A stretch of 64,000 nt of DNA from Haliotis cracherodii. Lineage: Eukaryota. The translations under genes were made by a program, and so were the position numbers. Below are positions 1-54,454 of this stretch, piece after piece. The DNA lies in NCBI RefSeq assembly GCF_022045235.1, contig NW_027266271.1, positions 31,310,001-31,374,000 on the forward strand, read 5' to 3'. How positions within the stretch are numbered: position 1 is the first letter of the stretch; the number at the start of each line of letters is the position of its first letter. The notes below the pieces were generated by a model that had not been told where the DNA came from, searched no databases, and worked only from the letters and a program-made list of their open reading frames with translations.

Positions 1-103
1 TGATTTTGTGTTTTCTTTCATGGCAAATCCATTTGGGGTGAGGTTGAGGTTGTTGTCCTTATTTATAATCTGAGAAAACAAATTCATTGTCAAACATACT
101 CAC

Positions 104-170
104 TCAGTGTAAAACACACACAGCAAGCTAATCCCAGGACTGCAAAACACAACCTACAGGAGGCCGCCAT
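104..170 (-). CDS. Signal-peptide first exon of a neighbouring paralog that continues left of the window
   Basis: ATG, then MAASCRLCFAVLGLACCVCFTL+A, then GTGAGT donor. 67 nt, phase 1, 6 differences from the exon at 47639-47705. Confidence 0.8.
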
Positions 171-9003: not shown

Positions 9004-9104
9004 NNNNNNNNNNNNNNNNNNNNNNNNNNNNNNNNNNNNNNNNNNNNNNNNNNNNNNNNNNNNNNNNNNNNNNNNNNNNNNNNNNNNNNNNNNNNNNNNN
9101 NNNN
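9004..9104. other. Assembly gap (N run)
   Basis: About 101 Ns. Confidence 0.99.
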
Positions 9105-10266
9105 TGCTGTGATACACAATACTAATCATGAAGTATGACACAGTTGCACAGTTTATTAGGGAAGAGTGACAGTTAGGGAATAATACAACAGTGATGAAAA
9201 TACAGAAACATGCTTAAATTGGCAGCATCCAGTTGTAATACATAATTGATAAATAGAAGTGAATGAAACAAAACAAAGACTCAGACCTACAAATGACATG
9301 CCAACGGCGTAGTTGAGGATTTTGAACAACGCGTTTAAATCACAGTAACTTTATATTATCTCATGAAGATTCTTTTCAACTGCGACTGTACTAGATAAAG
9401 GTGATACCAGAACGGTATTTACCATAGTACGAGATGAAGATCCCCCAGTGTTTAGACGATAATCACAAATTATTTCTGATCATGTATTTAAAAGCCTCCT
9501 TTCACATATGTATAGGGGTGTTGTGGCAGCCCTGTACTGAATCCATTGATTCGTCAAGTCGCAAATCCAGGTTTAATTTAAAAAATGGATACGTTAGTGA
9601 CATACAATGAGTGATTATCAACCTATGAGTGACAACGGGACATTACACGAGAACTTATTCCTTAACACGCATGATATACGGGTATAATTTTATGTCATTC
9701 AGTCGGGGCTACTTGAGTGAGTCAAACCGGCAATCCTCACATTATGGTGACAGAATTAAGAAATGCGCAGCTTGCGGTGTATCCGTCACTTATCCGTCAA
9801 TTTAACGTGAAGCTAAAGCTGACAAAAGTAACTGAAACGGACATAAACGATAATAAAATAATTGTCAATATTATTTTCCACCCGCTTTAGCCGGAAGTAG
9901 AATGATAATGTCAAACTTGGCTTGTTTACACATACTACTGACCTTCTGGACCAGCATGAAATCATTAACCGTATTTATGTTAACATGGTTAGAAAGGTGC
10001 ATGTGTATCATCATGACACCTACACACGATCATTCTACACTTCGGGGTGATATAGAGGAGATTTGTATTGGTCAATACACATACGGTTTGAACATAAGAA
10101 ACCATGACAACGAGACAGGAAGTGGGGAACAAGTCATTCTAACAAGTAATGGGACATCTGCCCGATTTATGTACTGCACAATTACACAAACACAATTCTA
10201 GAAACAGTATCATAAAACTAGGAAATTAAAGAAAAAAATATCGAATATGTTCAGCGGATTCATTCA

Positions 10267-10338
10267 TCAGATGTTGGCGTAAGTTCCGACAGTCTCCAGG
10301 AACTGTCGAGAAAACTCCAGACAGAAACGGACGTCATC
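10267..10338 (-). CDS. Last coding exon
   Basis: ttttcag|DDVRFCLEFSRQFLETVGTYANI*. Confidence 0.88.
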   Translation of the reverse strand, partial: DDVRFCLEFSRQFLETVGTYANI

Positions 10339-13300: not shown

Positions 13301-16300
13301 CAAGTTTCAGCTTTGAGTGTTGTCAAAGTGAAAAGGTCAAATTAAGGTCAAAACTTATAATATAAAAACGCAACATACATGGTGATCCCAACTACAACCT
13401 ACACATGTACATAATTCATCCCATTTGGACAAGGAGTGCTTGGTAATGACAATGAATAGGTTTTTCAATATGACTGTCGTGGAGGCCATGTTGAACATCG
13501 GATTTGTACCTCTTGAACAAATTGGTGAAATCAAGGATATGAAGTTTCAGCTTCGTTGGCCCAGTGGTTTCTGAGGAGATGTTAAACGACGGGCCACGAC
13601 ACTGACCACGACATAAACTCACGAGACTTTCTTTCACGTGGGCAAAACATAACAATGTAGGCCGGCGCGTAGGAATACTTTTTGAGAGAAAAAATATGTC
13701 CGTCATCTTCAAACCATTGATCAAACTGATCTGATTATTCAGAGTGTATCATCAACAGGAAGGGACTGAACAGACAAGAACATTGGATGAACAGCAGAAA
13801 GTAAGATAACTGCCAAAACACAATGTCAAGACTTGATGTCTTTAATAAGGTCAAATGGTCTCTTTAAACCAGTCTTGGCGATCCTGACCTATGTCCAAGT
13901 TGCCTTGAACTTTGACCAGTTTCTATTCATTTGGCAGGGTTATTCCAATGATTCATTCGATTATTTCGCTGACAACTACAAAACAAAAAGTGTTTGTATG
14001 AAGGCTTGTGTTATGTGATATGCGTATGCATTGTTTCGTCCCAGAGTGAGGTCGATCTTTGCAGCACCTACTGACAGCAGTATTTCATGCTGGTGCTGCC
14101 ATATATGCTCACCTTTTTTCTAGTTCAATATTAATGGGGGCACGAAGGGCCCATTCGTCTAAGTCGTGGCAATACGCTGTGCAGAGTTGTTTCCCTTTAG
14201 GCGTGCCAAAAACCTATGACCGTAAGTTCAGAACAGATTCACCCTGGTGATGTTCTTGGTTTGTCAGCACTCACTCATTCACTAAAGCACACATGCTGAA
14301 ACATTCTCTCTTTTATTGATGTCATGACACACACTGATCACAATGTTACAGTTGTGCAGATGTCTTTGTGTGAAAATTATAGGATAGTAAGTAGGTCAAA
14401 TAACAGTATGCAACTAACTGAGGACATGTCAACATCACATCGATTATCTTCATAATTGTGGGACCAATACATTGAAGAATCCCTCAGACCCCTCAACACC
14501 AGACCCAAAGAACATCAGACCTCTGCCAACAAACTAAAGCTGAAGTCCGCTCTTTCCGAATACAACCTCAAGAGCCAAGGCCATAACATCGTGCGGGAAG
14601 CCACCATAGTGTCTACCATGAACAACAACTGGCAACAAGAAAACTACATGAAGCCATTGACATCAGGAGACACCAGCCAGCCATGAACCGTGACCAGGGA
14701 ACCTATATTTATTGCTTTGACCATTGTCGGGGCACATTATCCAGCTGGCTTCAATTTGTCCATTGTCATTTCCATTCTATTACCTATCAGTGCTAATTAC
14801 CCAAATGCCTTCCATTTGCGTTGTGTTCCTCATAATAAAGAAGTTGACATCCACAAATGATATTCCTTATACTGTATATACATGTAATATTCTATTCTAC
14901 TTACTGGGTGGGCGAGCTTGGAGCGCCTACAACAAATACAAATTTCAAATGACGTGTGGTAATAAACAATAGAATGGATTGCAATCTAGTCACTCTTACA
15001 CGACTTGTTGATGTATTCACGAAACGTCGCACAAGTGTCGGTAAATTTATCAATTTTAAGAACTTTCATCTATTTTGCAGAACCACAACGTTTCATATGT
15101 ACCTACCTCAAGATGCTGTTGTACGGTCTTGTTTCCCATGGTCACGTCAGCCAAATCATCAAGGTTCAACCTTTTGAGGAAGTTTGAATCCAAAGACGTG
15201 TCCCCCTCCGATAACCACATCGCCATCGCTTGGTAGACGAACAGATACTGCTCCTGTATGTATGATAGAGTGAAATGGTTTACAAAATCAGCAGCAGCAA
15301 CGAATGATTTCCCAATCTTGATTTAATTTAATGACTTCTATCCATGACATTTGCCCCTGTGGAGAACTGGGTTAGAACAGGTGCACAACACTCTACTGTA
15401 TGAGACGCGACTAAATTGGACTGATTGCCCGGCCCAGACTGCTATGACAAGCTGTAATATGGCTGCGGCGTTACACGACATTCACTCACTCACTCCAGAT
15501 GAAGATGCGCCTACCTTTGTCTGGATCATGTTCGTCCTCTGTCTCCTCATGTTGGAGGCGATGCTAACAACGTCAACCACGCCCTCTGTCTTGGCCTGCT
15601 CCATGAGACCCTCGACAGCGATGTAGGTCCCTGTACGGCCTATACCGGCACTGGAGATGTTTTGAAAACAGAAAGATATTGAAATAATTATCAGCTGGAA
15701 AAACACATGTACTTCAATACCTTCATTACAAGATACTCCTTTAACACAACGGCCTGTCGTGTTCTCATTGTCATAGATTACATATATTATCTTTCACTTC
15801 AGTTCTTTCTGACCGTTGTGCATACACCTCTCTGTTCTCGTGTGGAGATAGGTTCACCCAGATACACTGAAGGACAATTATACTCAGCTGTTGGTAATCA
15901 CCGAATGACATGAGAAATTCTTTTGTTTATGGAATGGGTGAGCTGATTACCATTACTCTTGATCGTGACACCAAAGCGGTATAAATCATGGTGTCTTGAT
16001 CGGCAATTGTTAAGATGGGCGGAGCTTAGGTTGCATTATTGCACTGAATGATGTCACTCATATCGTATTGATTCTTCAGTTAAAGATAAATAATAAGCAG
16101 TATGTGAATGTATTATTGTTTACTTTGGTTAGAAGCCTCCAATGAAAAAAGACCCGTGAACACACAGAGAACAAACTAGTATGTATGTCTATACCTCCAC
16201 GTACACAAGACATCTTGGAATCTGGTGGAATAGAAACCATTACCTCTTCTGGTAACATTGTAATGCACGATATAGTTAATTGAAGTATGTTCCCTTGTAC

Positions 16301-19300
16301 CTATGAGGTATTCAACTTTTTTAATATAGCAATATTTAAACTCTACATCATTTAACCAATCTGTCAAAATAAAAGAAGGGGTTTGCTGTGCATTCCTTTT
16401 GCGCTTGGAACATTTGTTAAGTCCAGCATCAAATAACACTTTACTTCAGAAGCATATCCGGAAATCCCTCAACCAGATAACAACTGTGGTCTTACTTTCT
16501 AGAAAACAGATAAAAGGAGTATTTCCCTTAATTTCTAACACGCAGCAACATTCCATTGATTACATTGATAACGTTTATGCATGAACGTTCCCAGTTAAGA
16601 AAAACCCGGCTGTGGCGCTAATCCCATTAACCTTTGTCACAAGCAATATGCGACACATATATTTTCACTCTCTGTGTAAATGTATCCCAGTATATTTGGC
16701 GATTTGATTCTTTATCTATATATGGTTATCAGGTTCATAGCGACTGTAGGCTGGCGAGTGCAGTCAACACAAAAATACAACAGCACACGCCATTCACGAC
16801 AAACAAATATTATGCTCCATTCTTACCTGCAGTGAACTATGATTGGCTGCGTCTGCTCCCTGGATGTGACCTTCACCTTGCTAATAAACTCCAGTAGAGC
16901 GGAAGTGTCTGGGACGCCATGATCCGGCCAGCTGGTGAAGTGGAAGTGCTGGAGACACAGCTTCTTGGCAGCCTAAACACAGAGTGGAATTGTAAGTTTA
17001 CTAATGTATTAGTCAGTGTTTATCATATTTCACTAATGGTTATTTGGCAATTCAAACGTTTAATGAAACAAATCTATACTATACCTGATTGTGTTGCACG
17101 GAAAGCTTAGTGACCGTGTAGTTTGCGAAGCGTGTCTGTGTATCCATGGTTACAGATATGTCCCCGTACGTCTCTGTACCTTTCTCCGGCCAATAACGAA
17201 GGCACTTCATCTGTGTTTAAATGTATTTACTTCGATCAAACAGATTACGAATATTCCCCAACACAAACGTTATAAATATAAAACGTCAAGGACAAAGAAT
17301 AACCAGTCTCCAATATCTACCGAAACAAATTCCACTGGGCGTAATGGGCAAAACAGCTGTGAAACATACACAAACTAACGAGCAAAAAACCCGCCACCAA
17401 ACAGTTTTCTAGTCTAAAACAAAACATGCGCAAAATTTAACAGTTGATGTTTTAATATGAAAAACAATTATTCAAAAACGGCATTTGAAAATGACAAGAT
17501 AAAAAAACCCAGGTACTTAAAGTTCTGCAGACAGGTTTATCATGCTGTGCACTGTCGAGTAGTCGATCAGACCCGCAGAATCGACGTCGATCTATTTTAA
17601 AGTCCAGTGCTACACATAAGGCTCAGTATCGGATGTGACAACGAAGCCTTTAGCAACGATGCAGGTCCTAACACGACATCGAACAGGGTACACGAGTCTC
17701 CTGACATCCTGATTTGGGATCCTACGCCATTCTTCCTGCAGGGTTCTTGCCAAGGCATCCCTCGTCAATGGTGCCTGTTGACGTTTCCGAATCAGCGTCC
17801 ACTTTGGTACCAGAGGTACCAATGTAGAATTTGTAGTATTGATTGTTTCCATTTGTCTTGGAGACAGCAACTTCCCCTTTACAGTTGCATTGCATCATCA
17901 TTAAATGTTAGGAAAGTTAAAATTCATTGCTCAGATGCAATCTTACACTCGAGTCCCCGATATTTCATTGTCATATAATGTGTTTGAGTGTGCTTTTGAC
18001 ACTATTTCAGTTATTTTCAGGAAAGCTCGACGTGATGCAGGTATAGACGTATATTATTTTGGTGAAACGCTCGAGATTGGGTCTGTTGCACATCGTGTTG
18101 GCAACTTTGTAACCATCGCCCATATATCGAATTCTTCGAAAGTCGGTGTAACAGAAAATTCATGTGACAGCTTCACCAATATAGCATCATCACCTTGCCT
18201 GCCTCGATGAGACCAGTTGCCATGACAACGATTCTGCATTCTTCCTGCCAGATCATCCCCCAGAAGTTGTCCACAATCTCAAGTCTGTAGGGCCCTGTGA
18301 ACGATATCAGCGATTTCAGTACTTTGCTATACAGAGAGCACGTTGTTTATGGCTTCATCAAAACAGAATAACAAAACACTCGTGTATATATATCAAGGTT
18401 TTCAAGCCACAATACTCTTACGACATTGTAGTGGTGGTCATTAATGTACCAATCAATCCTACCTTGTGCTGCTATGTAGCGCCTTTCGGTGTAGTATCCC
18501 TACAAAATCAATATAGTGGTCAGGTTACACTAGAAACTACAAACGTCAGATTATGTTTGCATAAACCCATTCAGAAACAAGTATATGATCATATATCATA
18601 CTGCGCATACACCGCACTTTATAACATATAATAAGACTATTCGATGGGCTATAGACATAATTTTACAACTAAACAATGCTATTTCACACTGAGCATATAT
18701 TGTAATTTATCACTGTGACAACGATAAAGGGTGGCTTTAGCCTTAATTAAACACTAAACGGTCATATCTCACACTGAACATATCTCGTAATTTATATTGA
18801 TACGATACGGTGGGTTCTGGCCATAATATAACACTAAACGCTCACGTCCACATAGCTGGCGTTGATGTAGTCTCCTCCACCGCCGCTGTTGTCGTCATGC
18901 AGCACCACACGGTTGTAGTCATCTATACAAAGACACACCACCAGATCAGGGACGTAATGTTACAGAATGTGATAAATTATAACCCGATGTTTACTCGCTG
19001 CTTGTCGCGTACATTACATTCAAGTTTAAACGTGCAGCAATTGTACTTTATAGTAATAAGCAAGATAATGTGTACCCTACCTGTAGCACCCGCCACTCGC
19101 AATATGCGCAGAAATTAGTCATGTTTATATACCAACAACTCAAAGGCATTTTTAGGAGCGGTCGGATAACCTGGTGGTTAAAACGTTTACTCGTCACGCC
19201 GAAAACCCGGATTCGATAACCGAATTTGGTACAATGTGTGAAGCCCATTTCCGGTGTTACCGCCGTGATATTACTGGAATATTGCTAAAAGCGCTCACTC

Positions 19301-22300
19301 ACATTTTTTACTGTTATGTGTGCACGTCCTATGTACTACACCACCATTGTAAGACAATCATCGTGGGTTCGGATAGCAATATGTACCAGTACCACTTCAC
19401 TAACTTACACGGGTAGTAGCCTCTAAATCTATTCTTCCCTTTGTTTTCCGACAGCTGAGATTCTTGGTGGGGGTGTATGAAACCACAAGGCAACCCCTGA
19501 AAGTAACAAAAGATATCAGTAGCCGATCAGTGTCAGACGTTCTTGTCTACTTCAAACATATACCGAAACAGCCGAACTGATCTATTTTCAAGCCATTATA
19601 AAAAAAGACCTGAAACTCGTCCTCAGCCTCCTCCGGTCGTTCCACCATTCCCCGAACCTTGACCTCTAACTCTGACACAGGTATCGCAGTACCCATCAAC
19701 ACTTCCCCTACGTTGCAGTAGTTCCTGTCCTGGAGACCCACATCAGCATCTGGTTCAAGGACAGGCGGATCATGGTCCTGCTCAACCTGGATGATGTCCT
19801 GTTGCAGTGGCGGTTCTATGTCATCATCTTCCTCATCTACTTCTCTTTCTACTGTATCTCCCACTTCCTTACCATCTGAGAACATATGACACACATAACA
19901 GTCATATAATATCACACATACTTGTCATATCTGAGAATATATGCCACACATACTTGTTCAACGTTTTATTTTTCTAGAACGTTTAAGGTATACTCAAACA
20001 AAAAGAAACGCAAAGCCAGATTTGTGTGAGGAAGGAAAATACATTTATACGAGGAACCACACTTGGTATTGAGCCAAAGTGTTGTGGAAAGAACACTTGG
20101 TGATTGTAGTCATCTCAGTTATCGGTACATAGGAAAAGTCCCAGGTGAAGGTCAGCTACCATCAATAACGCGTATGTCCGTTGGAATCGATAGCGGCCTG
20201 ACATCTGCTGCCCATGGACGAAACGAGTATGCGAATCATATCCTGGGGAATGGTAGCCAATTCGGCCTGCAACGCAAAAGCCAACTGCTGCAACGTCTGG
20301 GGTTGTGGTTGAAGTTGGCGTAGCCGTCTATCCAATTCATCTCACAGGTGCTCTATCGGGTTCAAATCCGGGGATCTCGAGGGACAGGGGAGAACATCAA
20401 CGTTGTTATTGTGTAGACAGGCTCTTGTGACCCGTGTTGTATGCGGCGGAGCGTTGTCCTGCTGGAATACACCGTTGCCGTTGACTGCAATTGAGAGGGC
20501 GTGTGGTAGGAGAATTTTGTTGATGTATCGTTGCAGCGTAAGACTGCCCTGGATGTGGACCAAACCAGTCCTGCCATGATGAGAGATAGCCGCCTACATC
20601 ATGACCTCACCAAACCTGTCCACTTCCTGTACGCAGTTTCCGGCGTAACGTTCTCCTCGACGTCTGTAGACCCGTGCTTTTCCATCCCCTCGACGGGGCA
20701 TAAATTTTGATTCGTCGCTGAACCTGACATCTCTCCATCGCAGTTGAGGCCATACCCTGTGTTGACGACACCAATGTTGTTGACCATGTTGTCGACTCAA
20801 TGTGACGCGTCGAATTGGACGTCTTGCTCGTTGACCTGCTCGCTCCTAAACGATTCGCACGGTCTGGTCGGAGATTCTGCGGGTATTTAGGATGCGGTTG
20901 AGGTTGCTGTTGTCGTCCTGTCACCTGGCTAAAATCCTGGCTTCAGCCGACCGGGATTCCTCTGCCTGAAAGTGGCCTATGACGTTGTTTCTTTGCACTT
21001 CTGATAATCTTGGCATGTTGTTGGACTGTTACTGTTCGATTGACGCAGATGCCAGGCAATAAAAAAACAGGCACTTTAATACCGTTCATACTGCTGTGGC
21101 TGCACGTGCAGTACGTGCAGCTCCATGGCCCTTTTGTTTCCCGAATAATGGTTTGCATGTTCTTGTAGTGATCATTTTGATCCGGGAAATTTGTCATTGG
21201 TATTATAAGATATTAAACTTCTTCATTTGACACCTCTTGGTCCGCTAATGTTGCTTTTATGGGCAAACATATTCGTATTGCGTTTCTTTTTTAAAGAGTA
21301 TATATGTTGGCTATGTTTTAACATTATCAATATATTCATCCCAAGCAATGATCGGGGGCGCGGGTCGCCCAGTCGTCTAAGGCGCCGTATATTGCATTGA
21401 AGAGTTCCGTCCCTTGTGCACGCCAGAAACCTATGATCGTGGGTTCGAATCCCTGGTTATGTTTCGAGGTTTGACAGCACCATACCAGTGCTCGTGGGTT
21501 TCACCAAAGTGGTAAACGTCTTAGAAGCTGACATGCTGTGATGTAACTGGGATATTGTTCAAAGAAATACTAAAACCCAAGTCACTCACTCATTCACTTT
21601 TTCACTTCCCAATTTCTTACCTAACACGCCAAGATGATAACGAGTGATGATGACTAGATTTGTGCCAATGAGCCCTTGATCTTTTGGCAGTGTTACTTGT
21701 TACATTCCATTCCTATAACTTCCTAAATTCAAACAAATACATGATTCCAAACACCTAAATGTCAAATGCTTTCAATTCTCGAACCAAATCTGAAACGATC
21801 GCGACAATGTTTTGTTAATCATTCAATCCAACACATGCAACAATTAACCAAAACTAAAGTTTAGATGTGTATGGCATCACACATAAATTGTTTGCGTTAA
21901 TAGACAATGCTTACTGTGTTTCTCCGATCTTGTAGAATTCCAATTTTCCGTTTGTCCAACAGGACGTTTTTGCAACAATGCTGCGGACTGTTTTCTCGTT
22001 CGTCGTCTGGAAATATGAAGAGAATTTACAAACACAAGCAACAGGTAAAGTACTGCTGGCAACCACTAAGGGTTTTGAAAACATTGTACTCACACTAGCA
22101 ATACCGTGATGATGACGAAGAATAGAAGTATCACGGCACCGGTTGCACACCCCACAATGATAGACACGGGTAAGGATTCCTGACCTTGAATAACAAAACA
22201 TATTATTGGGTAGATATTGTATGATTTAAGGCCTCAGTAAAGCTTTCAAAACGTTGTATGGTTGACATTTGACGCACCAGTGACAAATATAATGTCCGAT

Positions 22301-37300: not shown

Positions 37301-40300
37301 ATGCCGATGGCACGTTCACGTTGCACGTTTGAAAGGCGTGGCATGACAAATGGCCGTAAAGACTTTTGTTTTCTTGTGTTTTTCTTTTTTTGTTAATGAC
37401 TGCTAATAAGTATGGCTGAAAGCACGTGCGGTATTAGGCCACGTGACCAGTTGCACGTGAAAAACCACTTTTGCCACTATAGTGCTGTGCACATGATTTT
37501 CATCGATTCACCTGCACAAAAACGGGTGTTATCTGAAGCCAATACGTGGCCATTACTGTTTAAATACACAATAAGGGCCCACAATGATAACTGGTCAAAA
37601 TGTTAAAATTGTGAAGTTTTTAATTTTGTTCAGTATATTTTGTGTTTGTGATGTTGTTCCCTGTACATACGTCCTGCATCTAAAATAACAGTTGTAGCTT
37701 TTGTACATGTGATATATTTGTTAACAGAACAGAATGCACGCAAGTGAATGTTATCACTCCAGCGTGTGATTCTAAGTAAACATCAGGGCTGTAATCGTAT
37801 CGCGTCAGTTCTCTGTATAAACACGCTTCAAGTAGCTGCTCATGAACAGCACAGACAGTATTACCAACACACCATAAGGTAACAACTATTTGCTATTCAT
37901 CAGTTAACAATAAATAAATGCGCATTCCCTAGTATCTAGGCAATATCATATTCGGGACGTTCACGCAAACACGTAGATATGACAATTACTAAAATGCTAT
38001 GCTTATTTCATGGAAATTGACTACAACTGAAATGTTACACCTTATTCGAGGAGGGTTTAACATTTGTCATGAACAACATAGCGTTTATTTACTGACTGTA
38101 TGATTCCATCGATTCCAATATAACGTTTATCTCATTTCTTATTGAGAATTGTACAAACTAGCTAACTTTAAATGAATTAACAAACATATTTTCTGAACTT
38201 AAATTCTCACCAAACAAAACATATACAGTTTTATAGTGAATATGGGGCGGTGGTAAAAGAGATCGCACTTCACGCCGAAGACCCGGGTTCGATCCCCCAC
38301 ATTGGCAAAATGTGTTAAGCCCTTTTCTGGTGTCCCCCACCGTGATATTGCTGGAGTATTGCTAAAACCATACTCACTCATTATAGTGAATACACTGCAA
38401 GGTAAAGTGTCAGCCATATTCTTAACCATTTATCATTATACACTCTGTTACACAGAGAAACTAGTTGAATTCACACAATGCTGTGTGACTGTAGCCCCGG
38501 CCAACTGACACACGCCGTCATGTCATACCAAAAGTTCGAGCCCCATTGCGGCATATGTTTCATTACAGGTCATGACGAGGGACAGATAACATCCAGTACG
38601 AAGCTCGAAATTGTGCATTTGAGGTTTTGTTAAAAATTCATAAATGTTCATGCACGAGATGGAGTTTTGACCCAGCTATGTCTCTTCGTGGAGGATGTTT
38701 TAGTATTGGTCTGACGCATCAACGTTTTAGAGCACAATTTGTTAATTAAACAGTTCCAAGAAGTAATAAAAACATGTGACGTCAATGAATAAAAGAATAT
38801 TATAAAGATATCACTTTGACTAAGACTATAGACACGGATCTTTTTTATGTATTTCACAGATACAAATCTAACATAAACATGCAACGTACGTTGATCCCTG
38901 TGGTAGACTGTAACATGACGTATCCTGTACTGCCGTCCCAGGTCCACCTTCCACATACTCGGGGAGTTGGCAGCAGAGTGGAAGCAGGAGCCGCCATTCA
39001 CGTCCTGGTTCCTGTTGCCGTCCACAGCCTTGTCTGAAGTCCAGTTATTAAGTGTTCCAGATGTAGAGGTGGCTGTCTTGTTGAAGGCCACGTTCTCTGC
39101 AAGTACGACATATCGATAATCATTACTCAAACTCAATCGCCCACGTGAAGTGCTGGTAGATTATGTAAGGTCCAATCAACATTTATTGTATTCCTTTTTT
39201 CATAGAATGTTTCAAGAAAATATTTGTGAAACTGAAACATATATAAAATGCAATAGCGAATACTTGTCATACTTGTTTTAAATACTATACTCAACAACAA
39301 AAGTTCTTGTGACACCAATATTTTAGTGTATTTTTAAAACAAGTAAAGTTTGGTTTTCAATACTGTAGTACATGTATAGAATCAAATCACAAAAACGCAA
39401 CTGCTACAGAAAAGCATGCATTCCATGCAAAAGTTGACTTTTATGCAAGCCTCATGCATTTCACTACCCAAGAATGGGTATAAACACATGTTCGTTAACG
39501 GGATTCCATATGCATTGTTTAGCATCGTGCTGACAACCACTTAGAAAAACAACAAAACTACGCAATTATTCAACATTACGAAATGCCACGCCTGTCCGAA
39601 AATGAGCGTCTGCGAGCCATTGGTATGCTTGAAGCAGGATCGAGTCAACGTGATGTTGCAAGACAATTTAACGTCCACAGAAACACCATTTGGTGTTTAT
39701 GGCAACGTTGGCAACAGACGAATGTAGTCAGAGACCATCTTCTGAGTGGCAGGCCACGAGTAACCAATAATCGACAAGACAACTGGATTCCAACAACACA
39801 CCTACGAAATCGATTCCAGCCAGCAACAGTGACTACAAAAAGCATCCCTGGCCTTCGACGAATATCTTCACAAACCGTACGTTGCCGCCTCAGATGTGCA
39901 TGGATTGTCGCAAGAAGACCCGCCAGACGTCCCATTTTTACAGGAAACCACCGTCAAGCACGTCTACAGTGGTGCAGACACTGTCTATGCTGGACGATCA
40001 TGCAGTGGGGACAAGTTCTATTCACTAACGAGTCTCGTTTTCACCTCAGCCACAGCGATGGACGGATTCCAGTGTACCGACGCCGAGGTGAACGTTACGT
40101 CAATCATTGTGTCATGGAAGAAGATCGGTTCGGGGGCGGCAGCGTTATGGTATGGGGTGGGATTACAGCAAGACAGAGGACCCGTTTGATAGTGGTAGAG
40201 GAAAATCTCAATGGACAGATCATCGGCCCTGTTGTTCTACCGTTTTTGCGTCGTCATGGCCCAGGCATTGCCTTTCAACATGACAACGCCCGGCCTCATA

Positions 40301-43300: not shown

Positions 43301-46121
43301 TGACCACCCGATGCCGTTAGTCGCCTTTTACGACAAGTATAGTCGCCTTTTACGGCAAGCATGGGTTGCTGAAGACCTATTCTACCCTGGAATCTTCACG
43401 GGTCGTGTGTGTCAAAGACATTTATGTTTACTATACCACTCTTTACTGAAGACGCGAAAATCAACACGCTCAAGTATACTTGCATGTCAGTGACAGCTTC
43501 GAACGAAACGCAAGGTCACCACCAGAATAAGAAAAGACAACGTTAACCGTGATCTACTCAGCGTTTTGCGCTAGAGATAGGGAATGTTATTGTTCACCTT
43601 TGGGATATTTTGGGCCACATTATCAGAAATCAGACACACTTCTACGGAGTTTTCGAATGATTGGTATCGGAAATGTTCACTTTGAGTGATCTGGTTGTGC
43701 AGTCGTAAACAAACAACTCCCGAAACAGTGCCACAAAATACCCTTCGAAGAGGACACTGATGGCACAACCGGATCATTCCGAGTAAGTCCAGATATCAGT
43801 CCAGATAGTTTAAACTGACTTCATTTCACCACGCTGATCCTTTTACGTCGAATCAAATTGAAAGTTGCGAAAGTAGTTGGGTGCGTGACGCTCATTGGGA
43901 CCCTCGATCTATTGAACGGTAGTCGTACATTGTAAATGGATATATGACTCGATTATAATTATAATGTCTGTTGAAGCTCAATGCATAACTTATCTAGGAT
44001 GCAAACCGAATTTGATGCGTGTGACTTCCTTGTTTGGTATAATAAAGTGTTTGTTAATATCTCTCGCTCACATGAGATTGTTTCAGTTCTGCCTTGTAGT
44101 TGCAAAATGAATGACGTCTCGCGATATTTTATGAATGAAAAAAGTAGTCCCGGTGTGACAGAGGTCACGGTTATCCAATGAAAACGAATAAAACAAGGTC
44201 AACCTTTTACGACACACGTGTGACGTACGGATTTAGTATCTTACCACCTGTATCTTCACCAAGTGGGTAATAAAAGTGTTTATGCTACGTCTACCATCTT
44301 TTTTTTGAGGGAACAGATACTGAAAATGTCAGTTAATAACTCTATTCTACTAATTATGAATATCATATTTAATAAACATGTATCTGTTAATGCCATTAAC
44401 TATAAATAGTAATTATAATAAATGAGATCCTTTGTGATAAAGAGTTCATTCATCCCTTGCGATGGAGAAATCAACAAAGTCAAGCAAATAAAAGCGACAT
44501 AACCCTTCACATATTCATACGAAATCTCGATTGTACGTTTTCTACTTTATTATCATGAGCATGTATCTATGAATTAATATCCAATAGTGATGACAACAGG
44601 TGTTCGCGAAAAGGTGAGCGTATCCTACCCAACCGGTGACACCCGTCACAAACATATGCATGACAAGTCAATTATTCACCTGAAAAAAAAATAGGAAATT
44701 GCATCGGACATTATTTTTGTCATTGATGCATCATCATGTCTCCCATAAAACGTTTTGAAAGCTTTGCTGAGGCCTTGAATGTTTTAACCTTGATCAACGA
44801 ACTTTTGTGGAAGACTCGTACATGTATGATGCTCTTGAAATCTTGGTAGAAAGAGTATGCTCGATTGTATAATTTTAAATTTTATAAATTAAATGTAAAC
44901 AACAAAGGCTGGAGCTGCAGGAATATTGCTTGGCATAAAGGGAACGAAATACGATGACTTGCCTCTTTGGCAAGTGCCATTCCTCCCATCCCTCCACTGT
45001 AGTGCACAGGCCCCAGGACATTCTCCTGTGGTGGAGTTACACACGGCCTCTCTTTCACAGTGACAGGAATAGCGACAGGAGTCTCCGAACTGTCCTTCAG
45101 GGCAGGTAGCTGGGGAGAAAATATAATACTGCTTTTGAGGCGTACTAGTAAGAACGAAATGTTGTCATACAAGTAGAGTGAGTGAGTGAGTATGGTTTTA
45201 CGCCGTTTTTAGCAATATTCCAGCAATATCACGGCGGGGGGACACCAGAAATGGGCTTCACACATTGTACCCATGTTGGGAATCGAACCCGGGTCTTCAG
45301 CGAACGCTTTATCCACTAGGCTACCCGACCGCCCCTTCATACAAGTAGAAGAACCTATTCATATTTTGAATGACACTTGCGTTGGGGATGCCACACCCTT
45401 GTTGTCTTGAGTGATATATATAGAGGATTCATCACGAGTGTTTTTTAATATGGGAAATATCAACCGAGTCTTAGTTAATCGGTATTTGCCGAGCCTTTGG
45501 CGAGGCAAATACTGATTAACGGGACGAGGTTGATATTTCCCATATTAAAAAAACACGAGTGATGAATTCTATTTATCATTTTCACATTTTTGCTTCCCAA
45601 TTAAGGAATAATTAATTGCATTGAACATTAACATCAGCAACTTGTCGAAATCTTACGTATAGATCGTGCGTAGTGATACATGTTTTCAAAAGCCGCGTAA
45701 ACCAAAATTAACAACCCCTTAACTCCTTTATGGCATATTCCTTCGCTGAGAAAAAAAGATTATTTTAAACAAAATACTTGAAAGGACTTTTGCAGAATAA
45801 TTGAAATAATGTCTCCAACATCAAAGGTATCCATGTAGTTTTTAAACAACTACTCACATGCACCGGCGAAAAAAGTCCCACTTCCGGCTATCTAATTTGC
45901 ATATCTAATTTGCATACTTATGTCATTGGGGTATGACATATATGTTTTTATGTCATAAGCTTATGTCATGGATAAATGCTTTAGTTAAATGATAAATTAT
46001 CATACGCTATGTCAGGCAATGTTGAACTGTGACACTGATGAGTGTAAAGGTTATTGTACACCTGTTACTGTCAAATCACAATGCATTGGATTGTTTAGAA
46101 GGGTTGGATTGTTTAGAAGGG

Positions 46122-46190
<69 letters not shown>

Positions 46191-47705
46191 CTGTTTGTTT
46201 AATTATTGTTTAACACCTCACACAGAAGTATTCCAGCTATATGACGGCGTTGTGTAAATAATCGAATCTGGACCAGACAATCCAGTGACTGGCGTCATGA
46301 ACATCGATCTATGAAACTGGAATATCATGACATGCATCAACTGAGTCAGCGAGCGAGACCACTCGATCCCGTTAGTCGCCTCTAACGACAAACATGGTTT
46401 GCTAGGTGGTTGGGTGTGATCATGTGGTACTTCTCTTAGCTTAGGCACTTCAGCGCATGTATATTTCAGTCAAAATTTATGGAAAGACACATTTTGCTTA
46501 CAACAGTTTACTAGGTTTGCCATCGAAGGCCTGCTTGAATCATTCCAGAAATTGTATGGTAGACATTCAGAATAATTCACTATCACCTTTACCGTGAGTT
46601 TTCACGCCTCCTTACTCACTGGTACTTTATTAATGACATGAGTGGTGGATGCTACCAGTCGAGCAGGACTTATAGTACCCTTAGGCCTAGGTGCTATATT
46701 TGTTATTCAACAGGTGGCATTAAGTCAAAAACAGTCAGTGTTTCTTCCCAGATATGCATGCCTAGATAACAATTGCCTGAAGGACGAATATCTGAATACA
46801 TGTGTATACCTATTTTCATCTGCTGAAGTTTTTATATCATCTTCCTAGTACACATAACCTCATGTTAAATTCTTATGTTCGATAAATGTCCTTGCCTATT
46901 GTGAATCGTGTTGATTTTGGCAGGCATTCCATACCTTTTCTGTCAACTGATCTAGCTCTTCCAAACCTGTTAACTGAATCTCCAAGCCAATTCTTATAAT
47001 ATAAATACGACACAATCTTTGTGAAAATGACGTATATATAGCTTAATGTACATAGAATGGTATTTCATGAATATGTTGTACACTTTTGGCACGGGAGTCA
47101 ATATTATAGCTCCAAATTCCTATACCATTTACTATATATTTCCAGTGCAATAAATAACCTTGTTTTCTGCATCCATACTGTCGGGCAAACCAACCCACCC
47201 CAAACACCCTAGAGATCAAATGTCTCCCGCGCCCCTTTTAAAGTTGTAACCACCAAATCCTCAATAGTCGGAGAGTCGTGTGATATTGAGGACCTAGTGT
47301 GCCAAGAAGCCCCAGAGGGTCTATGTAATAAATGTACGTATGGTGTCATTATAAGTTGTCAACCGATCTCGAGGGGTTTTTGGTGTAAGGTTAGGGGTAC
47401 ATAGGCTCGCACACTGGGTAAAGCATACCATATGCCCGGTTGACAACGAATACATCTCATAGACATTCATTCACAGACCCGTAGTATATGGCCGAAGTTT
47501 CTCGGAGCAAAACGGTTTTTTCAGCCATTTTGATAAATCCATAAATACAGAGATGGTTGTAGTAGTTTTCTTGTATGTATATAGAGCTCATATTCACCGT
47601 ATGAAAAAAACAACAACTTCATAGTTTAACATACCCACTCAGTGTAAGACAAACACAGCAAGCTACTCCCAGGACTGCACAACACAACCCACGGGAGGCC
47701 GCCAT
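10267..47705 (-). CDS. Whole-gene span: receptor-type tyrosine phosphatase with F-type lectin + EGF ectodomain (spliced, >=26 exons)
   Basis: Hand-assembled exons with AG/GT(GC) boundaries and matching phases give SP-EGF-FTLD-5xEGF-TM-PTP D1-PTP D2-stop. One junction (15107 to 12913) is unresolved. Confidence 0.92.
10832..10964 (-). CDS. PTP D2 exon
   Basis: TATESLLLVLLVNIASRLKDDGTVDLITDMGRLCARHGGAPFTM. Phase 2-0. Confidence 0.85.
11173..11312 (-). CDS. PTP D2 exon (WPD and HC degenerate)
   Basis: DDATTTTTIHNYHLTGSVRDPGVAEM...GSSMIVS+AG|gtatgt. Phase 0-2, like the D1 WPD exon. Confidence 0.85.
12304..12420 (-). CDS. PTP D2 exon
   Basis: AHFPSSDKDVTTSRFTASMRSKTVLSDGISVTTIDLGLK|gttagt. 117 nt. 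Confidence 0.8.
12571..12690 (-). CDS. PTP D2 exon
   Basis: SYKWNNGFYIMSSCPNKEDIWNAVYNTDSRTLITWGQENQ, equivalent to the D1 YIAxQGP...FW region. 120 nt. Confidence 0.85.
12879..12913 (-). CDS. PTP D2 micro-exon
   Basis: tctag|TG GAC..., DSERNSIATVP|gtaagt. 35 nt, phase 1-0; the upstream phase-1 partner was not securely found. Confidence 0.6.
14456..14860 (+). mobile_element. Penelope-like GIY-YIG endonuclease fragment
   Basis: QYIEESLRPLNTRPKEHQ...KSALSEY...GHNI..., then MNRDQG in a shifted frame. Confidence 0.7.
15107..15253 (-). CDS. PTP D1 end and interdomain linker exon
   Basis: EQYLFVYQAMAMWLSEGDTSLDSNF...QQHLE|gtaggt. 147 nt. Confidence 0.92.
15515..15650 (-). CDS. PTP D1 exon (P-loop and Q-loop)
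   Basis: SAGIGRTGTYIAVEGLMEQAKTEGVVDV...MRRQRTNMIQTK. 136 nt. Confidence 0.95.
16827..16972 (-). CDS. PTP D1 exon (WPD loop to VHC)
   Basis: AAKKLCLQHFHFTSWPDHGVPDTSALLEF...PIIVHC+AG|gtaaga. 146 nt. Confidence 0.95.
17085..17210 (-). CDS. PTP D1 exon (KCxxYWP)
   Basis: MKCLRYWPEKGTETYGDISVTMDTQTRFANYTVTKLSVQHNQ. 126 nt. Confidence 0.92.
17620..17800 (-). mobile_element. Tc1 transposase C-terminal fragment
   Basis: LARTLQEEWRRIPNQDVRRLV...RVRTCIVAKG. Confidence 0.75.
18194..18294 (-). CDS. PTP D1 exon (FWxMIW)
   Basis: PYRLEIVDNFWGMIWQEECRIVVMATGLIEAGK. 101 nt. Confidence 0.93.
18463..18499 (-). CDS. PTP D1 exon (YIAAQG)
   Basis: GYYTERRYIAAQG. 37 nt. Confidence 0.92.
18846..18922 (-). 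CDS. PTP D1 exon (DYINAS)
   Basis: YDYNRVVLHDDNSGGGGDYINASYVD. 77 nt. Confidence 0.93.
19409..19496 (-). CDS. PTP D1 exon (KNRF loop)
   Basis: GLPCGFIHPHQESQLSENKGKNRFRGYYP. 88 nt. Confidence 0.92.
19610..19875 (-). CDS. RPTP exon: acidic juxtamembrane region
   Basis: GKEVGDTVEREVDEEDDD...NYCNV...AIPVSEL...EDEFQ. Phase 1-0. Confidence 0.85.
19991..21300 (-). mobile_element. Degenerate Tc1 transposon
   Basis: TA-flanked TIRs (TACTCAAACAAAAAGAAACGCAA / TTGCGTTTCTTTTTTAAAGAGTA). MPRLS at 21016; FSDES, FQQDNAPPH and SPDLNPIEHL in broken frames. Confidence 0.92.
21915..22006 (-). CDS. RPTP exon: basic stop-transfer/juxtamembrane segment
   Basis: RRTRKQSAALLQKRPVGQTENWNSTRSEKH|gtaagc. Phase 2-1. 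Confidence 0.88.
22094..22184 (-). CDS. RPTP exon: transmembrane helix
   Basis: GQESLPVSIIVGCATGAVILLFFVIITVLLV|gtgagt. Phase 1-2. Confidence 0.9.
22880..23280 (-). mobile_element. Highly decayed Tc1-like fragment
   Basis: GCIT...GDNINSDKYRQII...QNNNA-like translation. Confidence 0.5.
23944..24090 (-). CDS. RPTP exon: EGF-like repeat
   Basis: ECNASHYGVDCNKACVERKCAGTNSSCDRYNGSCDTGCLVGWTGDDCAQ. 147 nt. Confidence 0.9.
24315..24458 (-). CDS. RPTP exon: EGF-like repeat
   Basis: ECSKGTYGDGCANECLKRNCQRTSPCNHVTGRCEPGCEAGWMGQDCSR. 144 nt. Confidence 0.9.
24704..24850 (-). CDS. RPTP exon: EGF-like repeat (duplicate B)
   Basis: ECDTGNYGINCNKACAERNCVAGTTSCDRHTGWCVTGCLPGWNGSDCTR. 147 nt. Confidence 0.9.
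25125..25271 (-). CDS. RPTP exon: EGF-like repeat (duplicate A)
   Basis: ECDTGNYGISCNKTCAERNCVAGTTPCDRHTGSCVAGCLPGWRESDCTR. 147 nt, with a weaker AAG acceptor. Confidence 0.82.
25861..26140 (+). mobile_element. Internally deleted Tc1 derivative
   Basis: MPRLTESQCNNAIGRLQTG N-terminus joined directly to the C-terminus LAQALQEEWVNIP...IASIGR. Confidence 0.85.
27110..27692 (-). repeat. 97-bp tandem repeat derived from the EGF exon 3' half + splice donor
   Basis: Anchor GACAGTAAGACCTCCTCACC at 27126, 27223, 27320, 27417, 27513 and 27603. Confidence 0.95.
27622..27753 (-). CDS. RPTP exon: EGF-like repeat
   Basis: VCSHGTYGKFCNKFCHCQNSSCDPDSGVCPGDCRPGWQGVRCDK G|gtgagg. 132 nt. Confidence 0.9.
27868..28176 (-). 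mobile_element. SINE of a third family
   Basis: tRNA-like head (GGTTGAATCCC B box on the minus strand). Related copies at about 12070-12285, 34210-34520 and 41530-41720. Confidence 0.7.
29072..29278 (-). CDS. RPTP exon: F-type lectin domain, second half
   Basis: LRRIANCTIHLSNDTSSDGTLCHTF...CDGRGRYLTIRNP...TLNICEVEIY G|gtatgt. 207 nt. Confidence 0.92.
29750..30330 (-). mobile_element. Decayed IS630-Tc1-mariner-like transposase fragment
   Basis: KTEMQNWL...KTVLYEKI...TDKMAADHGHPVL. Confidence 0.55.
31600..31980 (-). mobile_element. Penelope-like RT C-terminal fragment
   Basis: KETSETASSVSYSDL...TKLFDKRDDFNFPTVNFP. Related pieces lie near 3730-4060, 22230-22440, 44620-44945 and 46500-46570. 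Confidence 0.75.
32100..32650 (+). mobile_element. RNase H-bearing LINE (I/Nimb-like) fragment
   Basis: RIPAYVGLRGNKKADKLVK, resembling the WIPAHVGIxGNExAD motif. A similar LINE 3' end lies at about 59290-59640 (GEDPPFC...TVKHILFDC). Confidence 0.6.
32721..33757 (-). mobile_element. Unclassified TIR-bounded DNA element with decayed coding remnant
   Basis: Imperfect ~40-bp TIRs (CCTGGATAAAAATAGTAGAAAGCTGAATT / AATTCAGCTTTTTATTATTTTCTCCCAGG). Internal AAKFHSHRAYHAVQQW...PTEWAW...VLKMTLCACK. Confidence 0.65.
34820..35760 (-). mobile_element. LINE 3' fragment
   Basis: RLGLSKLKINYGR...RICPFCNSAIEEEIHFTFECPYY, with a (AAGTC)n tail-like repeat near 34822. Confidence 0.75.
36136..37635 (-). mobile_element. 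Near full-length Tc1-family (DD34E) transposon with frameshifted transposase
   Basis: TA-flanked TIRs (TACTGAGTCAAACTAAAAACTTCAC / GTGAAGTTTTTAATTTTGTTCAGTA). ATG at 37344 (MPRLS), frameshift near 37200; FSDE, FQHDNARPH and SPDLNPIE with D-34-E spacing. Confidence 0.95.
38890..39096 (-). CDS. RPTP exon: F-type lectin (FTP) domain, first half
   Basis: ENVAFNKTATSTSG...KAVDGN...SCFHS...WKVDLGRQYRIRHVTVYHRDQ. 207 nt, phase 1-1. Confidence 0.92.
39375..40410 (+). mobile_element. 3'-truncated Tc1 transposon (ORF 39583-40410)
   Basis: MPRLSENERLRAIGML HTH; FTNESRF (first catalytic D mutated to N); FQHDNARPH; ends before the catalytic E. Left end approximate. Confidence 0.9.
40945..41520 (-). mobile_element. 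Decayed Tc1-like remnant
   Basis: TA-CACTGGGGAGCAAAAGAAAC terminus-like sequence and an SPIEHL-like motif near 41360. Confidence 0.45.
42529..44274 (+). mobile_element. Hairpin-headed putative non-autonomous element
   Basis: Palindrome at 42529-42676, followed by TTTATTACCCAC, whose inverse lies at 44263-44274. Confidence 0.65.
43136..43405 (-). mobile_element. SINE of a second family (GACCCGTGAAGAT head, (AAAC)n tail)
   Basis: Near-identical copy at 6655-6918; partial copies near 8130-8300, 11480-11630, 46190-46400 and 63850. Confidence 0.85.
44963..45109 (-). CDS. RPTP exon: N-terminal EGF-like module, GC-AG donor
   Basis: ccccag|CT ACC TGC..., TCPEGQFGDSCRYSCHCEREAVCNSTTGECPGACALQWRDGRNGTCQR G|gcaagt. 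147 nt, phase 1-1. Confidence 0.88.
45178..45336 (-). mobile_element. tRNA-derived SINE with 13-bp TSD
   Basis: GGGGCGGTCGGGTAGCCTAGTGG...GGGTTCGATTCCC (A/B boxes), (ACTC)n tail, TSD TCATACAAGTAGA. Relatives near 19158, 38243, 40443 and 48095. Confidence 0.9.
45422..45996 (+). mobile_element. Hairpin-headed putative non-autonomous element
   Basis: Palindrome at about 45422-45572, followed by TTTATCATTT, whose inverse lies at 45987-45996. Confidence 0.6.
46124..46188. repeat. (GATT)n microsatellite
   Basis: Directly visible. Confidence 0.95.
47639..47705 (-). CDS. RPTP exon 1 (signal peptide), proximal copy
   Basis: MAASRGLCCAVLGVACCVCLTL+A|GTGGGT. Phase 1 matches the EGF exon starting at 45109. 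Confidence 0.8.
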
Positions 47706-54387: not shown

Positions 54388-54454
54388 TCAGTATAAGACA
54401 AACACAGCAAGCTAATGCTAGTACTGCACAACACAACCCACAGGAGGCCGCCAT
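54388..54454 (-). CDS. Duplicated or alternative signal-peptide exon, distal copy
   Basis: MAASCGLCCAVLALACCVCLIL+A|GTGAGT. 67 nt, intact; flanks are homologous to 47266-47950. Confidence 0.7.

What the first reader, a model, noticed from the sequence alone, without database searches (positions are those of the whole stretch)
10267..47705. Fucolectin-EGF receptor tyrosine phosphatase: a candidate glycan-sensing signalling receptor
Seen: the exons assemble to SP-EGF-F-type lectin-5xEGF-TM-PTP D1-D2, with WPD, HCSAGIGRTG and Q-loop intact in D1. Known: vertebrate two-domain RPTPs use Ig, FN3, MAM or carbonic anhydrase ectodomains, and F-type lectins are fucose-binding innate recognition modules. 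Inference: this is an invertebrate lineage-expanded receptor that couples glycan recognition to dephosphorylation (immune, allorecognition or gamete role). Automated pipelines would probably label it only 'PTPRK/MEGF-like' or split it across the 6-10 kb TE-filled introns.
Basis: partly seen in the sequence, partly recalled or inferred. Interest (0 to 1): 0.8.

Follow-up and report, generated by a model that had tools for sequence, protein, structure and literature searches.

The report
Abalone lectin-EGF receptor tyrosine phosphatase
The window holds an intact black-abalone gene for a cell-surface tyrosine phosphatase with a fucose-lectin-type domain and six EGF-like repeats outside the cell. 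It is one of nine tandem copies of a mollusc receptor family that is already annotated and was described in snails in 2025-2026, so it is real but not new.

Summary
On the minus strand, 27 coding exons (47705 to 10267; 3,291 nt, 1,096 codons) have consistent phases, no internal stops and canonical splice sites, with one GC donor. They encode a signal peptide, an EGF, an F-type lectin domain split over two 207-nt exons, five EGF-like modules, a TM helix, PTP D1 and D2.

- **D1:** keeps KNRF, WPD, HCSAGIGRTG and the Q-loop.
- **D2:** a dead pseudo-phosphatase that Pfam misses. Profile and structure comparison of paralogues show it has a PTP fold.
- **Lectin domain:** keeps the His/Arg/Arg triad but lacks the vicinal Cys-Cys.
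- **First exon:** a second intact signal-peptide exon lies at 54454-54388, so the 5' end is ambiguous.

The novelty claim fails. The same architecture is annotated in RefSeq for four Haliotis species, other gastropods and bivalves. It was published for Biomphalaria (PMC12297450, PMC13712769) with the same glycan-sensing reading.

This gene is copy 3 of nine tandem paralogues on one chromosome. Its sister copy has a full-length RefSeq model. RNA evidence is thin: spliced contigs confirm the E11-E12 junction and the E6 donor only.

This scan found the same family earlier on other DNA of this genome (s1-820426, s1-836061).

The parts
47639..47705 (-). E1p: proximal first coding exon. ATG plus signal peptide, phase-1 donor GTGGGT.
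54388..54454 (-). E1d: alternative distal first coding exon. Intact ATG and signal peptide, same length and phase, stronger donor GTGAGT. The sister copy's RefSeq model uses this type.
44963..45109 (-). E2: first EGF-like module. Phase 1-1, GC-AG intron donor.
38890..39096 (-). E3: F-type lectin domain, N-terminal half. Holds the His and the first Arg of the sugar-binding triad.
29072..29278 (-). E4: F-type lectin domain, C-terminal half. Begins with the loop that holds the second Arg.
27622..27753 (-). E5: EGF-like module 2. Its 3' end and donor are copied six times by an intronic 97-bp minisatellite (27107-27691).
25125..25271 (-). E6: EGF-like module 3. An RNA contig ends exactly at its donor.
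24704..24850 (-). E7: EGF-like module 4.
24315..24458 (-). E8: EGF-like module 5.
23944..24090 (-). E9: EGF-like module 6.
22094..22184 (-). E10: transmembrane helix.
21915..22006 (-). E11: basic stop-transfer and juxtamembrane exon. Its splice to E12 is seen in RNA contigs.
19610..19875 (-). E12: acidic cytoplasmic linker.
15107..19496 (-). E13-E20: PTP domain D1 in eight exons (19496-19409, 18922-18846, 18499-18463, 18294-18194, 17210-17085, 16972-16827, 15650-15515, 15253-15107). KNRF, DYINASY, WPD, HCSAGIGRTG and QTKEQY are all present.
10267..14926 (-). E21-E27: linker micro-exons and degenerate PTP-fold domain D2 (14926-14905, 12913-12879, 12690-12571, 12420-12304, 11312-11173, 10964-10832, 10338-10267 including TGA). 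No catalytic Cys, P-loop Arg or WPD.

Best explanation
This is an intact member of the mollusc lectin-EGF receptor-type protein tyrosine phosphatase family. That family is called 'MEGF/GBD RPTP' in Biomphalaria sudanica and 'scavenger-receptor class F-like subgroup 1C' in B. glabrata. The gene is the third of nine tandem, same-strand paralogues on one black-abalone chromosome.

What is shown:
- 27 coding exons encode a 1,096-residue type I membrane protein. In order: signal peptide, one 8-Cys EGF-like module, one F-type-lectin-fold domain, five more EGF-like modules, a TM helix, an acidic linker, D1 and D2.
- D1 has every catalytic motif.
- D2 has a PTP fold but no catalytic residues.

What is inferred:
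- The lectin head binds a ligand, most plausibly a fucosylated or other glycan. It keeps the His/Arg/Arg triad but has lost the Cys-Cys ridge.
- Ligand-driven clustering or exclusion then changes D1's access to phosphotyrosine substrates at the membrane, as in other receptor PTPs.
- D2 acts as a regulatory or docking pseudo-phosphatase.

The array evolves by diversification of the outer half and gene conversion of the inner half.
For: - **Gene model:** intact, with canonical splicing.
- **Exon-level domains:** Pfam and PDB hits for the lectin and D1 exons.
- **Lectin triad:** His, Arg(-Asp) and the second Arg align with the canonical F-type triad in a 638-domain alignment.
- **Lectin fold:** an AF2 model of the family ectodomain proxy P0124 (pLDDT 88) has F-type lectins as its top 11 PDB matches.
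- **D2 fold:** an AF2 model of the paralogue P0201 D1-D2 (pLDDT 86.7) superposes on LAR, RPTP alpha and RPTP epsilon D1D2 at TMq 0.82-0.87 over about 570 columns. An hhalign comparison of D2 with D1 is colinear, E 0.0036.
- **Sister copy:** RefSeq model P0188 joins the signal peptide, lectin, EGF, TM and PTP in one protein. Those of its exons that tblastn recovered at 97% or more (537 of 954 residues) map to C8:31.498-31.539 Mb, nine at 100% and two at 97-98%.
- **RNA:** spliced contigs join E11 to E12 exactly at 21915|19875, and one contig ends at the E6 donor.
- **Array and family:** searches show the tandem array. Searches show the same architecture in Haliotis spp., Pomacea, Patella, Gigantopelta, Littorina, Physella, Mytilus, Solemya and unionids.
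- **Literature:**
Against: - No full-length protein identical to this copy's product was found in the protein collection.
- No RNA contig covered E7-E10, and none was laid on the lectin exons. The one reads call was limited to 6 kb.
- One of the two junction contigs (X1) has 9 mismatches in 82 nt of E11, so it probably comes from the sister copy.
- Ectodomain exons differ from the sister at dN/dS of about 1.07. This fits diversifying selection but also relaxed constraint.
- The vicinal Cys-Cys of classical fucolectins is absent. No binding or catalysis has been measured in any family member.
Confidence: 0.85

Rival explanations
1. The gene is as described, but the lectin-fold domain is not a sugar binder. 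It serves as a variable protein-recognition or structural head, so the receptor senses proteins or self ligands rather than glycans.
For: - The vicinal Cys-Cys that packs against fucose in classical F-type lectins is lost in the whole abalone family.
- The loop after the first Arg is highly variable, and many members also lack His, the first Arg or the second Arg.
- Ectodomain dN/dS is about 1 between sister copies.
Against: - This copy and its closest paralogues keep His, Arg-Asp and the second Arg at the canonical spacing.
- The top structural matches of the family proxy are fucose-binding modules, including ones solved with fucose or Lewis antigens bound.
Confidence: 0.3
2. This copy is a young, still-open but transcriptionally weak or silent duplicate, on its way to becoming a pseudogene. 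The functional gene is the sister copy.
For: - No full-length RefSeq-type protein for this copy was found, while the sister has one.
- RNA contigs were sparse, and one junction contig fits the sister better.
- The proximal first exon has a weaker donor, GTGGGT.
Against: - All 27 exons are open with intact splice sites.
- X2 contigs match this copy at about 96-98% in E11 and E6. E6 is an exon the sister lacks altogether.
- The runs were tiny, at 80-89 Mb of contigs.
Confidence: 0.1
3. The lectin and EGF exons and the PTP exons belong to two different genes that happen to be colinear.
For: - Lectin-EGF-TM receptors with short tyrosine-bearing tails exist as separate genes in this genome (P0113 and relatives).
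- A PTP-only RefSeq model, P0201, exists for a paralogue.
Against: - The only TM exon (E10) is spliced through E11 into E12 in RNA contigs.
- E10 starts in phase 1 without a start codon.
- No alternative terminal exon or short tail follows the TM exon.
- RefSeq models for the sister copy (P0188) and for H. rufescens relatives (P0185, and P0183 from the lectin domain onward) join the lectin head to the PTP half.
Confidence: 0.05

Closest known systems
Biomphalaria MEGF/GBD receptor-like PTPs (SudRes1 region of B. sudanica, PMC12297450; B. glabrata LG5R 'subgroup 1C', PMC13712769)
   Same: - Same domain composition: signal peptide, MEGF/Tie2-type EGF repeats, a galactose-binding/fucolectin signature, a single TM and tandem PTP domains.
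- Clustered paralogues with variable EGF number.
- The same proposed role in glycan recognition coupled to phosphatase signalling.
   Different: - A different gastropod lineage (Vetigastropoda). Orthology was not tested here.
- No antistasin-like neighbour was seen in this window.
- In this abalone subfamily Pfam cannot detect D2, whereas the snail proteins are reported with two PTP signatures.
RefSeq 'receptor-type tyrosine-protein phosphatase epsilon-like' of Haliotis cracherodii (P0188), the sister copy 178 kb away
   Same: - Same exon plan, including two alternative signal-peptide exons.
- 99.7% nucleotide identity over the last 7.8 kb. The D1 catalytic exons and the D2 exons are identical at protein level.
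   Different: - The sister has two EGF modules after the lectin instead of five; E6-E8 are absent.
- The outer exons differ by 1-12% at nucleotide level, mostly through nonsynonymous changes.
- Its RefSeq model skips the two conserved micro-exons by using an in-frame alternative acceptor.
Vertebrate tandem-domain receptor PTPs (RPTP alpha/epsilon, LAR/sigma, CD45)
   Same: - D1 has all catalytic motifs.
- The D1-D2 arrangement superposes on solved D1D2 structures.
- D2 is non-catalytic, as in CD45.
   Different: - The ectodomain is a lectin plus 8-Cys EGF modules, not Ig, FN3, MAM or carbonic-anhydrase-like domains.
- D2 is shortened at its N-terminus and lacks the Cys, the Arg and WPD altogether.
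F-type lectins (eel agglutinin 1K12, striped-bass FBP32 3CQO, pneumococcal SpX, lectinolysin)
   Same: - Same fold.
- The His-x26-Arg and Arg-Asp-x4-Arg triad spacing is kept.
   Different: - The vicinal Cys-Cys is replaced by Gln-Leu.
- The domain is embedded in a membrane receptor and split by a 9.6-kb intron.
SCARF1/MEGF10/Draper-type EGF receptors, and the abalone lectin-EGF receptors with short tyrosine-motif tails (for example P0113)
   Same: The outer half (EGF, lectin, EGF repeats) is 50-60% identical between the short-tailed receptors and the phosphatase-tailed ones.
   Different: The cytoplasmic part is a tandem PTP instead of a short tail with YxxL/I motifs.

Membership tests
Classical receptor-type PTP (tandem D1-D2) | PTP catalytic domain recognised by PF00102 | tested here: met
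   Five D1 exons hit PF00102 singly, with E values from 1e-3 to 7e-12. The sister model P0188 hits at 7e-81 over residues 476-706.
Classical receptor-type PTP (tandem D1-D2) | Catalytic motifs in D1: KNRY loop, WPD, HC(X5)R(S/T), Q-loop | tested here: met
   KNRF (a Tyr to Phe change), WPD, HC|SAGIGRTG and QTKEQY are read directly from the exons.
Classical receptor-type PTP (tandem D1-D2) | Second PTP-fold domain after D1 | tested here: met
   - Pfam does not detect it.
- An iterated HMM reaches the D1 and D2 domains of CD45 and LAR.
- hhalign against D1 is colinear, E 0.0036.
- The AF2 model of paralogue P0201 covers whole D1D2 crystal structures, TMq up to 0.87.
- This was shown on paralogues. 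Their last two or three D2 exons are identical in protein to this gene's.
Classical receptor-type PTP (tandem D1-D2) | Signal peptide and a single TM helix | tested here: inconclusive
   The sequence shows a hydrophobic N-terminus, and a hydrophobic stretch of about 25 residues followed by RRRTRK. No dedicated predictor was available.
F-type lectin domain | Sequence similarity to solved F-type lectins | tested here: met
   Exon 3 against FBP32 gives 2e-13, SpX 3e-10 and eel agglutinin 6e-7. Exon 4 against FBP32 gives 0.003.
F-type lectin domain | F-type lectin fold | tested here: met
   The AF2 model of family proxy P0124 has F-type lectins as ranks 1-11 in the PDB search, TMt 0.76-0.83 for the single-domain entries. 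This is a proxy, not this gene's own joined domain.
F-type lectin domain | His / Arg / Arg sugar-binding triad at canonical spacing | tested here: met
   His-x26-Arg is seen in exon 3. Arg-Asp-x4-Arg spans the E3/E4 junction. These positions align with the canonical columns in 638 domains.
F-type lectin domain | Vicinal Cys-Cys after Arg-(x)-Asp | tested here: not met
   It is replaced by Gln-Leu here and is absent from the whole abalone family.
F-type lectin domain | Fucose binding | not testable with these tools
   This needs recombinant protein and a glycan array.
MEGF/SCARF-type (8-Cys) EGF-like repeats | A recognised EGF-family profile for each module | tested here: inconclusive
   E5 scores 21.9 bits against EGF_laminin, whose cut-off is 21. 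E6, E7 and E9 score 21.5-23.9 bits against DSL, whose cut-off is 24.2. E8 gives only a weak teneurin-EGF match. The eight-Cys pattern is visible in all modules.
Mollusc MEGF/GBD receptor-like PTP family (Pennance et al. 2025) | Extracellular MEGF plus a galactose-binding-like domain, one TM helix, and intracellular tandem PTP, in clustered paralogues | tested here: met
   The domain order comes from the exon model. There are nine tandem copies. The paper's definition was read.

The most novel reading that the evidence does not exclude
The array is one arm of a paired-receptor system. The same rapidly diversifying lectin-EGF head is mounted in three ways:
- on an active phosphatase (this gene, its sister and two others);
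- on phosphatase domains that have lost the P-loop arginine (three neighbours carry HCSAGIGSTG);
- on short YxxL/I-motif tails, in other clusters.

Gene conversion keeps the signalling halves uniform while the heads diverge. This would be a mollusc analogue of vertebrate activating/inhibitory lectin receptor pairs.
Probability: 0.25. Interest if true: 0.6.

Novelty: new member of a known kind. Interest (0 to 1): 0.3.

Why it matters
In schistosome-vector snails, the same receptor class lies under a parasite-resistance association peak. A well-resolved abalone array therefore gives a second system for asking what these receptors recognise and how the phosphatase signals. The array offers diverging heads, converted tails, variable EGF number, and both active and Arg-less D1 domains. 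That could bear on abalone disease, for example withering syndrome. This gene on its own adds a curated model, not a new kind of receptor.

Tried and rejected
- **Representatives search:** the search with lectin exon 1 was dominated by multi-lectin proteins. It gave only short family fragments (P0074, P0113, P0124). Full-length relatives came from word searches seeded with P0113 and P0188.
- **This copy's own product:** no protein identical to it was found, so the sister RefSeq model and other paralogues were used as proxies.
- **Joined sequences:** All searches on this gene were exon by exon. The joined CDS was checked only by coordinates, phases and split codons.
- I dropped that approach and redid the exon check from coordinates alone.
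- **D2 by single-sequence methods:** these failed. There were no Pfam hits for the D2 exons, and phmmer of P0201 against the PDB matched only D1.
- **Sequencing runs:** only three small runs of uncertain type were listed. The single 6-kb reads call gave two informative junction contigs and one exon contig.
- **Literature:** a second search for the architecture outside the two Biomphalaria papers found nothing more.
- **Flanking genes:** a look for Cys-rich (antistasin-like) ORFs in the flanks found none.
- **Minisatellite donors:** alternative donors in the 97-bp minisatellite were rejected as coding options, because the frame hits a stop ten codons after the first donor.

Full report
**What is in the window**

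The window is G000:C8:31310001-31374000 of a 1.18-Gb genome. Earlier notes of this scan, and the species names on near-identical RefSeq proteins, point to the black abalone, Haliotis cracherodii.

I fixed every splice site by reading the DNA. I then verified the model with a script that used coordinates only:
- 27 coding exons run from ATG 47705 to TGA 10269-10267.
- All acceptors are AG.
- All donors are GT except the GCAAGT donor of E2.
- Phases are consistent and there is no internal stop.
- The CDS is 3,291 nt, or 1,096 codons.

The ectodomain exons are all phase 1-1, as expected for shuffled extracellular modules.

Searches on this gene were exon by exon, and RefSeq paralogues served as proxies for whole-domain tests.

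**Domains**

*Lectin domain*
- Lectin exon 1 (39096-38890) hits PF22633 and PF00754. Among solved proteins it hits only F-type lectins with significance: FBP32 2e-13, pneumococcal SpX 3e-10, eel agglutinin 6e-7.
- Lectin exon 2 (29278-29072) hits FBP32 at 0.003.
- The His and first Arg lie at the canonical x26 spacing.
- Across the E3/E4 junction the loop reads Arg-Asp-Gln-Leu-Leu-Arg-Arg.
- In an alignment of 638 F-type domains, the Asp and the last Arg fall in the canonical Asp and second-Arg columns. The Gln-Leu pair replaces the vicinal Cys-Cys.
- An AF2 model of the family proxy P0124 (pLDDT 88) has F-type lectins as its eleven best PDB matches.

*EGF-like modules*
- The six modules have eight cysteines each and sit at or just under the Pfam thresholds for EGF_laminin and DSL.

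*D1*
- D1 (E13-E20) hits PF00102 exon by exon.
- It carries KNRF, DYINASY, WPD, HCSAGIGRTG and QTKEQY.

*D2*
- D2 (E21-E27) is invisible to Pfam and to single-sequence search.
- It is nevertheless a PTP-fold domain. Its profile reaches the D1 and D2 domains of CD45 and LAR after two iterations.
- It aligns colinearly with D1, E 0.0036.
- The AF2 model of the paralogue P0201 (pLDDT 86.7) covers whole LAR, RPTP alpha and RPTP epsilon D1D2 crystal structures at TMq 0.82-0.87. Single D1 structures reach only about 0.5.
- D2 has Ser where D1 has the catalytic Cys, no P-loop Arg and no WPD. It is therefore a pseudo-phosphatase.

**Is it one gene?**

Support for a single gene:
- The TM exon starts in phase 1 and has no start codon of its own.
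- RNA contigs from two runs labelled with the same species splice E11 to E12 exactly at 21915|19875. One of them (X1, 521 nt) runs on for the length expected of E13+E14.
- An X2 contig covers E6 and stops exactly at its donor.
- The sister copy's RefSeq model P0188 joins the signal peptide, EGF, lectin, EGF, TM and D1-D2. Those of its exons that tblastn recovered at 97% or more (537 of 954 residues) map to C8:31.498-31.539 Mb, nine at 100% and two at 97-98%.
- H. rufescens model P0185 has the same full plan, and P0183 has it from the lectin domain onward.

Weak points:
- The X1 contig has 9 mismatches in 82 nt of E11, so it probably comes from the sister copy.
- No contig covered E7-E10.
- The lectin exons lay outside the one 6-kb stretch I could lay.
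- No full-length protein for this copy is in the protein collection.

The first exon is ambiguous. A second intact signal-peptide exon, with a stronger donor, lies at 54454-54388. The sister copy has the same pair, and its RefSeq model uses the distal type.

**Context**

Own-genome searches with the lectin exon, the signal-peptide exon, a D2 exon and the P-loop exon place nine same-strand copies between 31.17 and 32.01 Mb of C8. Further clusters lie on C78, C34 and C5.

Compared with the sister copy:
- Identity is 99.7% over window 10000-17817 (E17 to the 3' UTR).
- Identity is 97.9% around lectin exon 1.
- Identity is about 86-93% elsewhere. This pattern indicates patchy gene conversion.
- Three EGF exons (E6-E8) are absent from the sister.
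- Ectodomain exons differ at dN/dS of about 1.07, from 44 nonsynonymous and 11 synonymous differences, with all cysteines kept.
- The cytoplasmic exons are almost identical.

Three array neighbours carry HCSAGIGSTG, which lacks the catalytic arginine. Introns hold Tc1/mariner remnants.

**Comparison with what is known**

The architecture is not new.
- Pennance et al. (PMC12297450) describe 17 B. sudanica receptor-like PTPs with extracellular MEGF and galactose-binding domains and tandem PTP domains. Most are clustered, and three lie in the SudRes1 schistosome-resistance region.
- PMC13712769 defines B. glabrata 'subgroup 1C': fucolectin/galactose-binding plus Tie2/EGF plus TM plus two PTP signatures. 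It proposes glycan recognition coupled to phosphatase signalling.
- My searches found PF22633 plus PF00102 proteins in four Haliotis species, Pomacea, Patella, Gigantopelta, Littorina, Physella, Mytilus, Solemya and unionid mussels. I rescanned two of them myself.
- The scan's own earlier notes on other DNA of this genome reached the same conclusion. I took the lead to the papers from them and checked the papers myself.

**Verdict**

This is a real, intact and correctly read gene, and a new curated member of a known, published family. The glycan-sensing mechanism remains an inference.

What is mildly new here:
- the pattern of diverging heads and converted tails in the array;
- the alternation of active and Arg-less D1 domains among neighbours;
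- the twin first exons;
- the degenerate D2 that Pfam misses.

Noticed in passing
G000:C8 31.249, 31.392 and 31.450 Mb (loci L009, L008, L010): Three of the nine tandem paralogues carry HCSAGIGSTG in D1, so the catalytic P-loop Arg is replaced by Ser. This gene, its sister and the copies at 31.188 and 31.933 Mb keep Arg. The array therefore mixes predicted active and inactive phosphatases.
   Followed up: partly
window 10000-17817 vs G000:C8:31498201-31506018: A 7.8-kb tract (E17-E27 plus the 3' UTR) is 99.7% identical to the sister copy, against about 90% background identity. A second 97.9% patch lies around lectin exon 1 (37636-40037). This indicates patchy gene conversion.
   Followed up: partly
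window 24255-25803: Three EGF exons (E6-E8) have no counterpart in the sister copy. EGF number therefore varies between recent duplicates, as reported for the snail genes.
   Followed up: partly
window 27107-27691: A 97-bp minisatellite of six copies repeats the 3' end of EGF exon E5 together with its splice donor. Only the first donor gives an open frame. The array is also present in the sister copy. It was already noted by the scan as s1-836113.
   Followed up: partly
window 12741 and exons 14926-14905, 12913-12879: The RefSeq model of the sister copy (P0188) uses an in-frame acceptor 51 nt upstream of E23 and skips two micro-exons. Those micro-exons are 100% conserved in both copies and are used in other paralogues' models. 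This is either alternative splicing or a misannotation.
   Followed up: no
window 102-170: The first coding (signal-peptide) exon of the next paralogue downstream lies at the window's start. Its lectin exon is about 20.5 kb before the window's start (C8:31289283-31289489).
   Followed up: partly
window 979-2892: A repeat with a 24-bp period keeps a 638-codon open frame of DKDDVLHC-like octapeptides on the minus strand. It lies between this gene's 3' end and the neighbour's first exon. It is probably a non-coding minisatellite.
   Followed up: no
window 51057-52706: A GC-rich satellite (units of about 84 bp within higher-order repeats of about 487 bp) lies between the two alternative first exons. 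A related array lies at the same place in the sister copy.
   Followed up: no
window 21400-21599 and 22400-22599: Contig word depth in the three runs is extremely high (about 1e5 and about 1e3), with many loose ends. This suggests a highly repeated or highly expressed short element, such as a SINE, inside introns 11 and 9.
   Followed up: no
window 20345-20593, 36359-37195 (-), 39583-40410 (+), 57693-58082 (-): Tc1/mariner DDE_3 and HTH transposase remnants lie in introns. A Pao/BEL retrotransposon peptidase fragment lies upstream of the gene.
   Followed up: partly
window 9004-9104: A run of 101 N (an assembly gap or mask) lies 1.2 kb downstream of the stop codon. It was left untouched.
   Followed up: no
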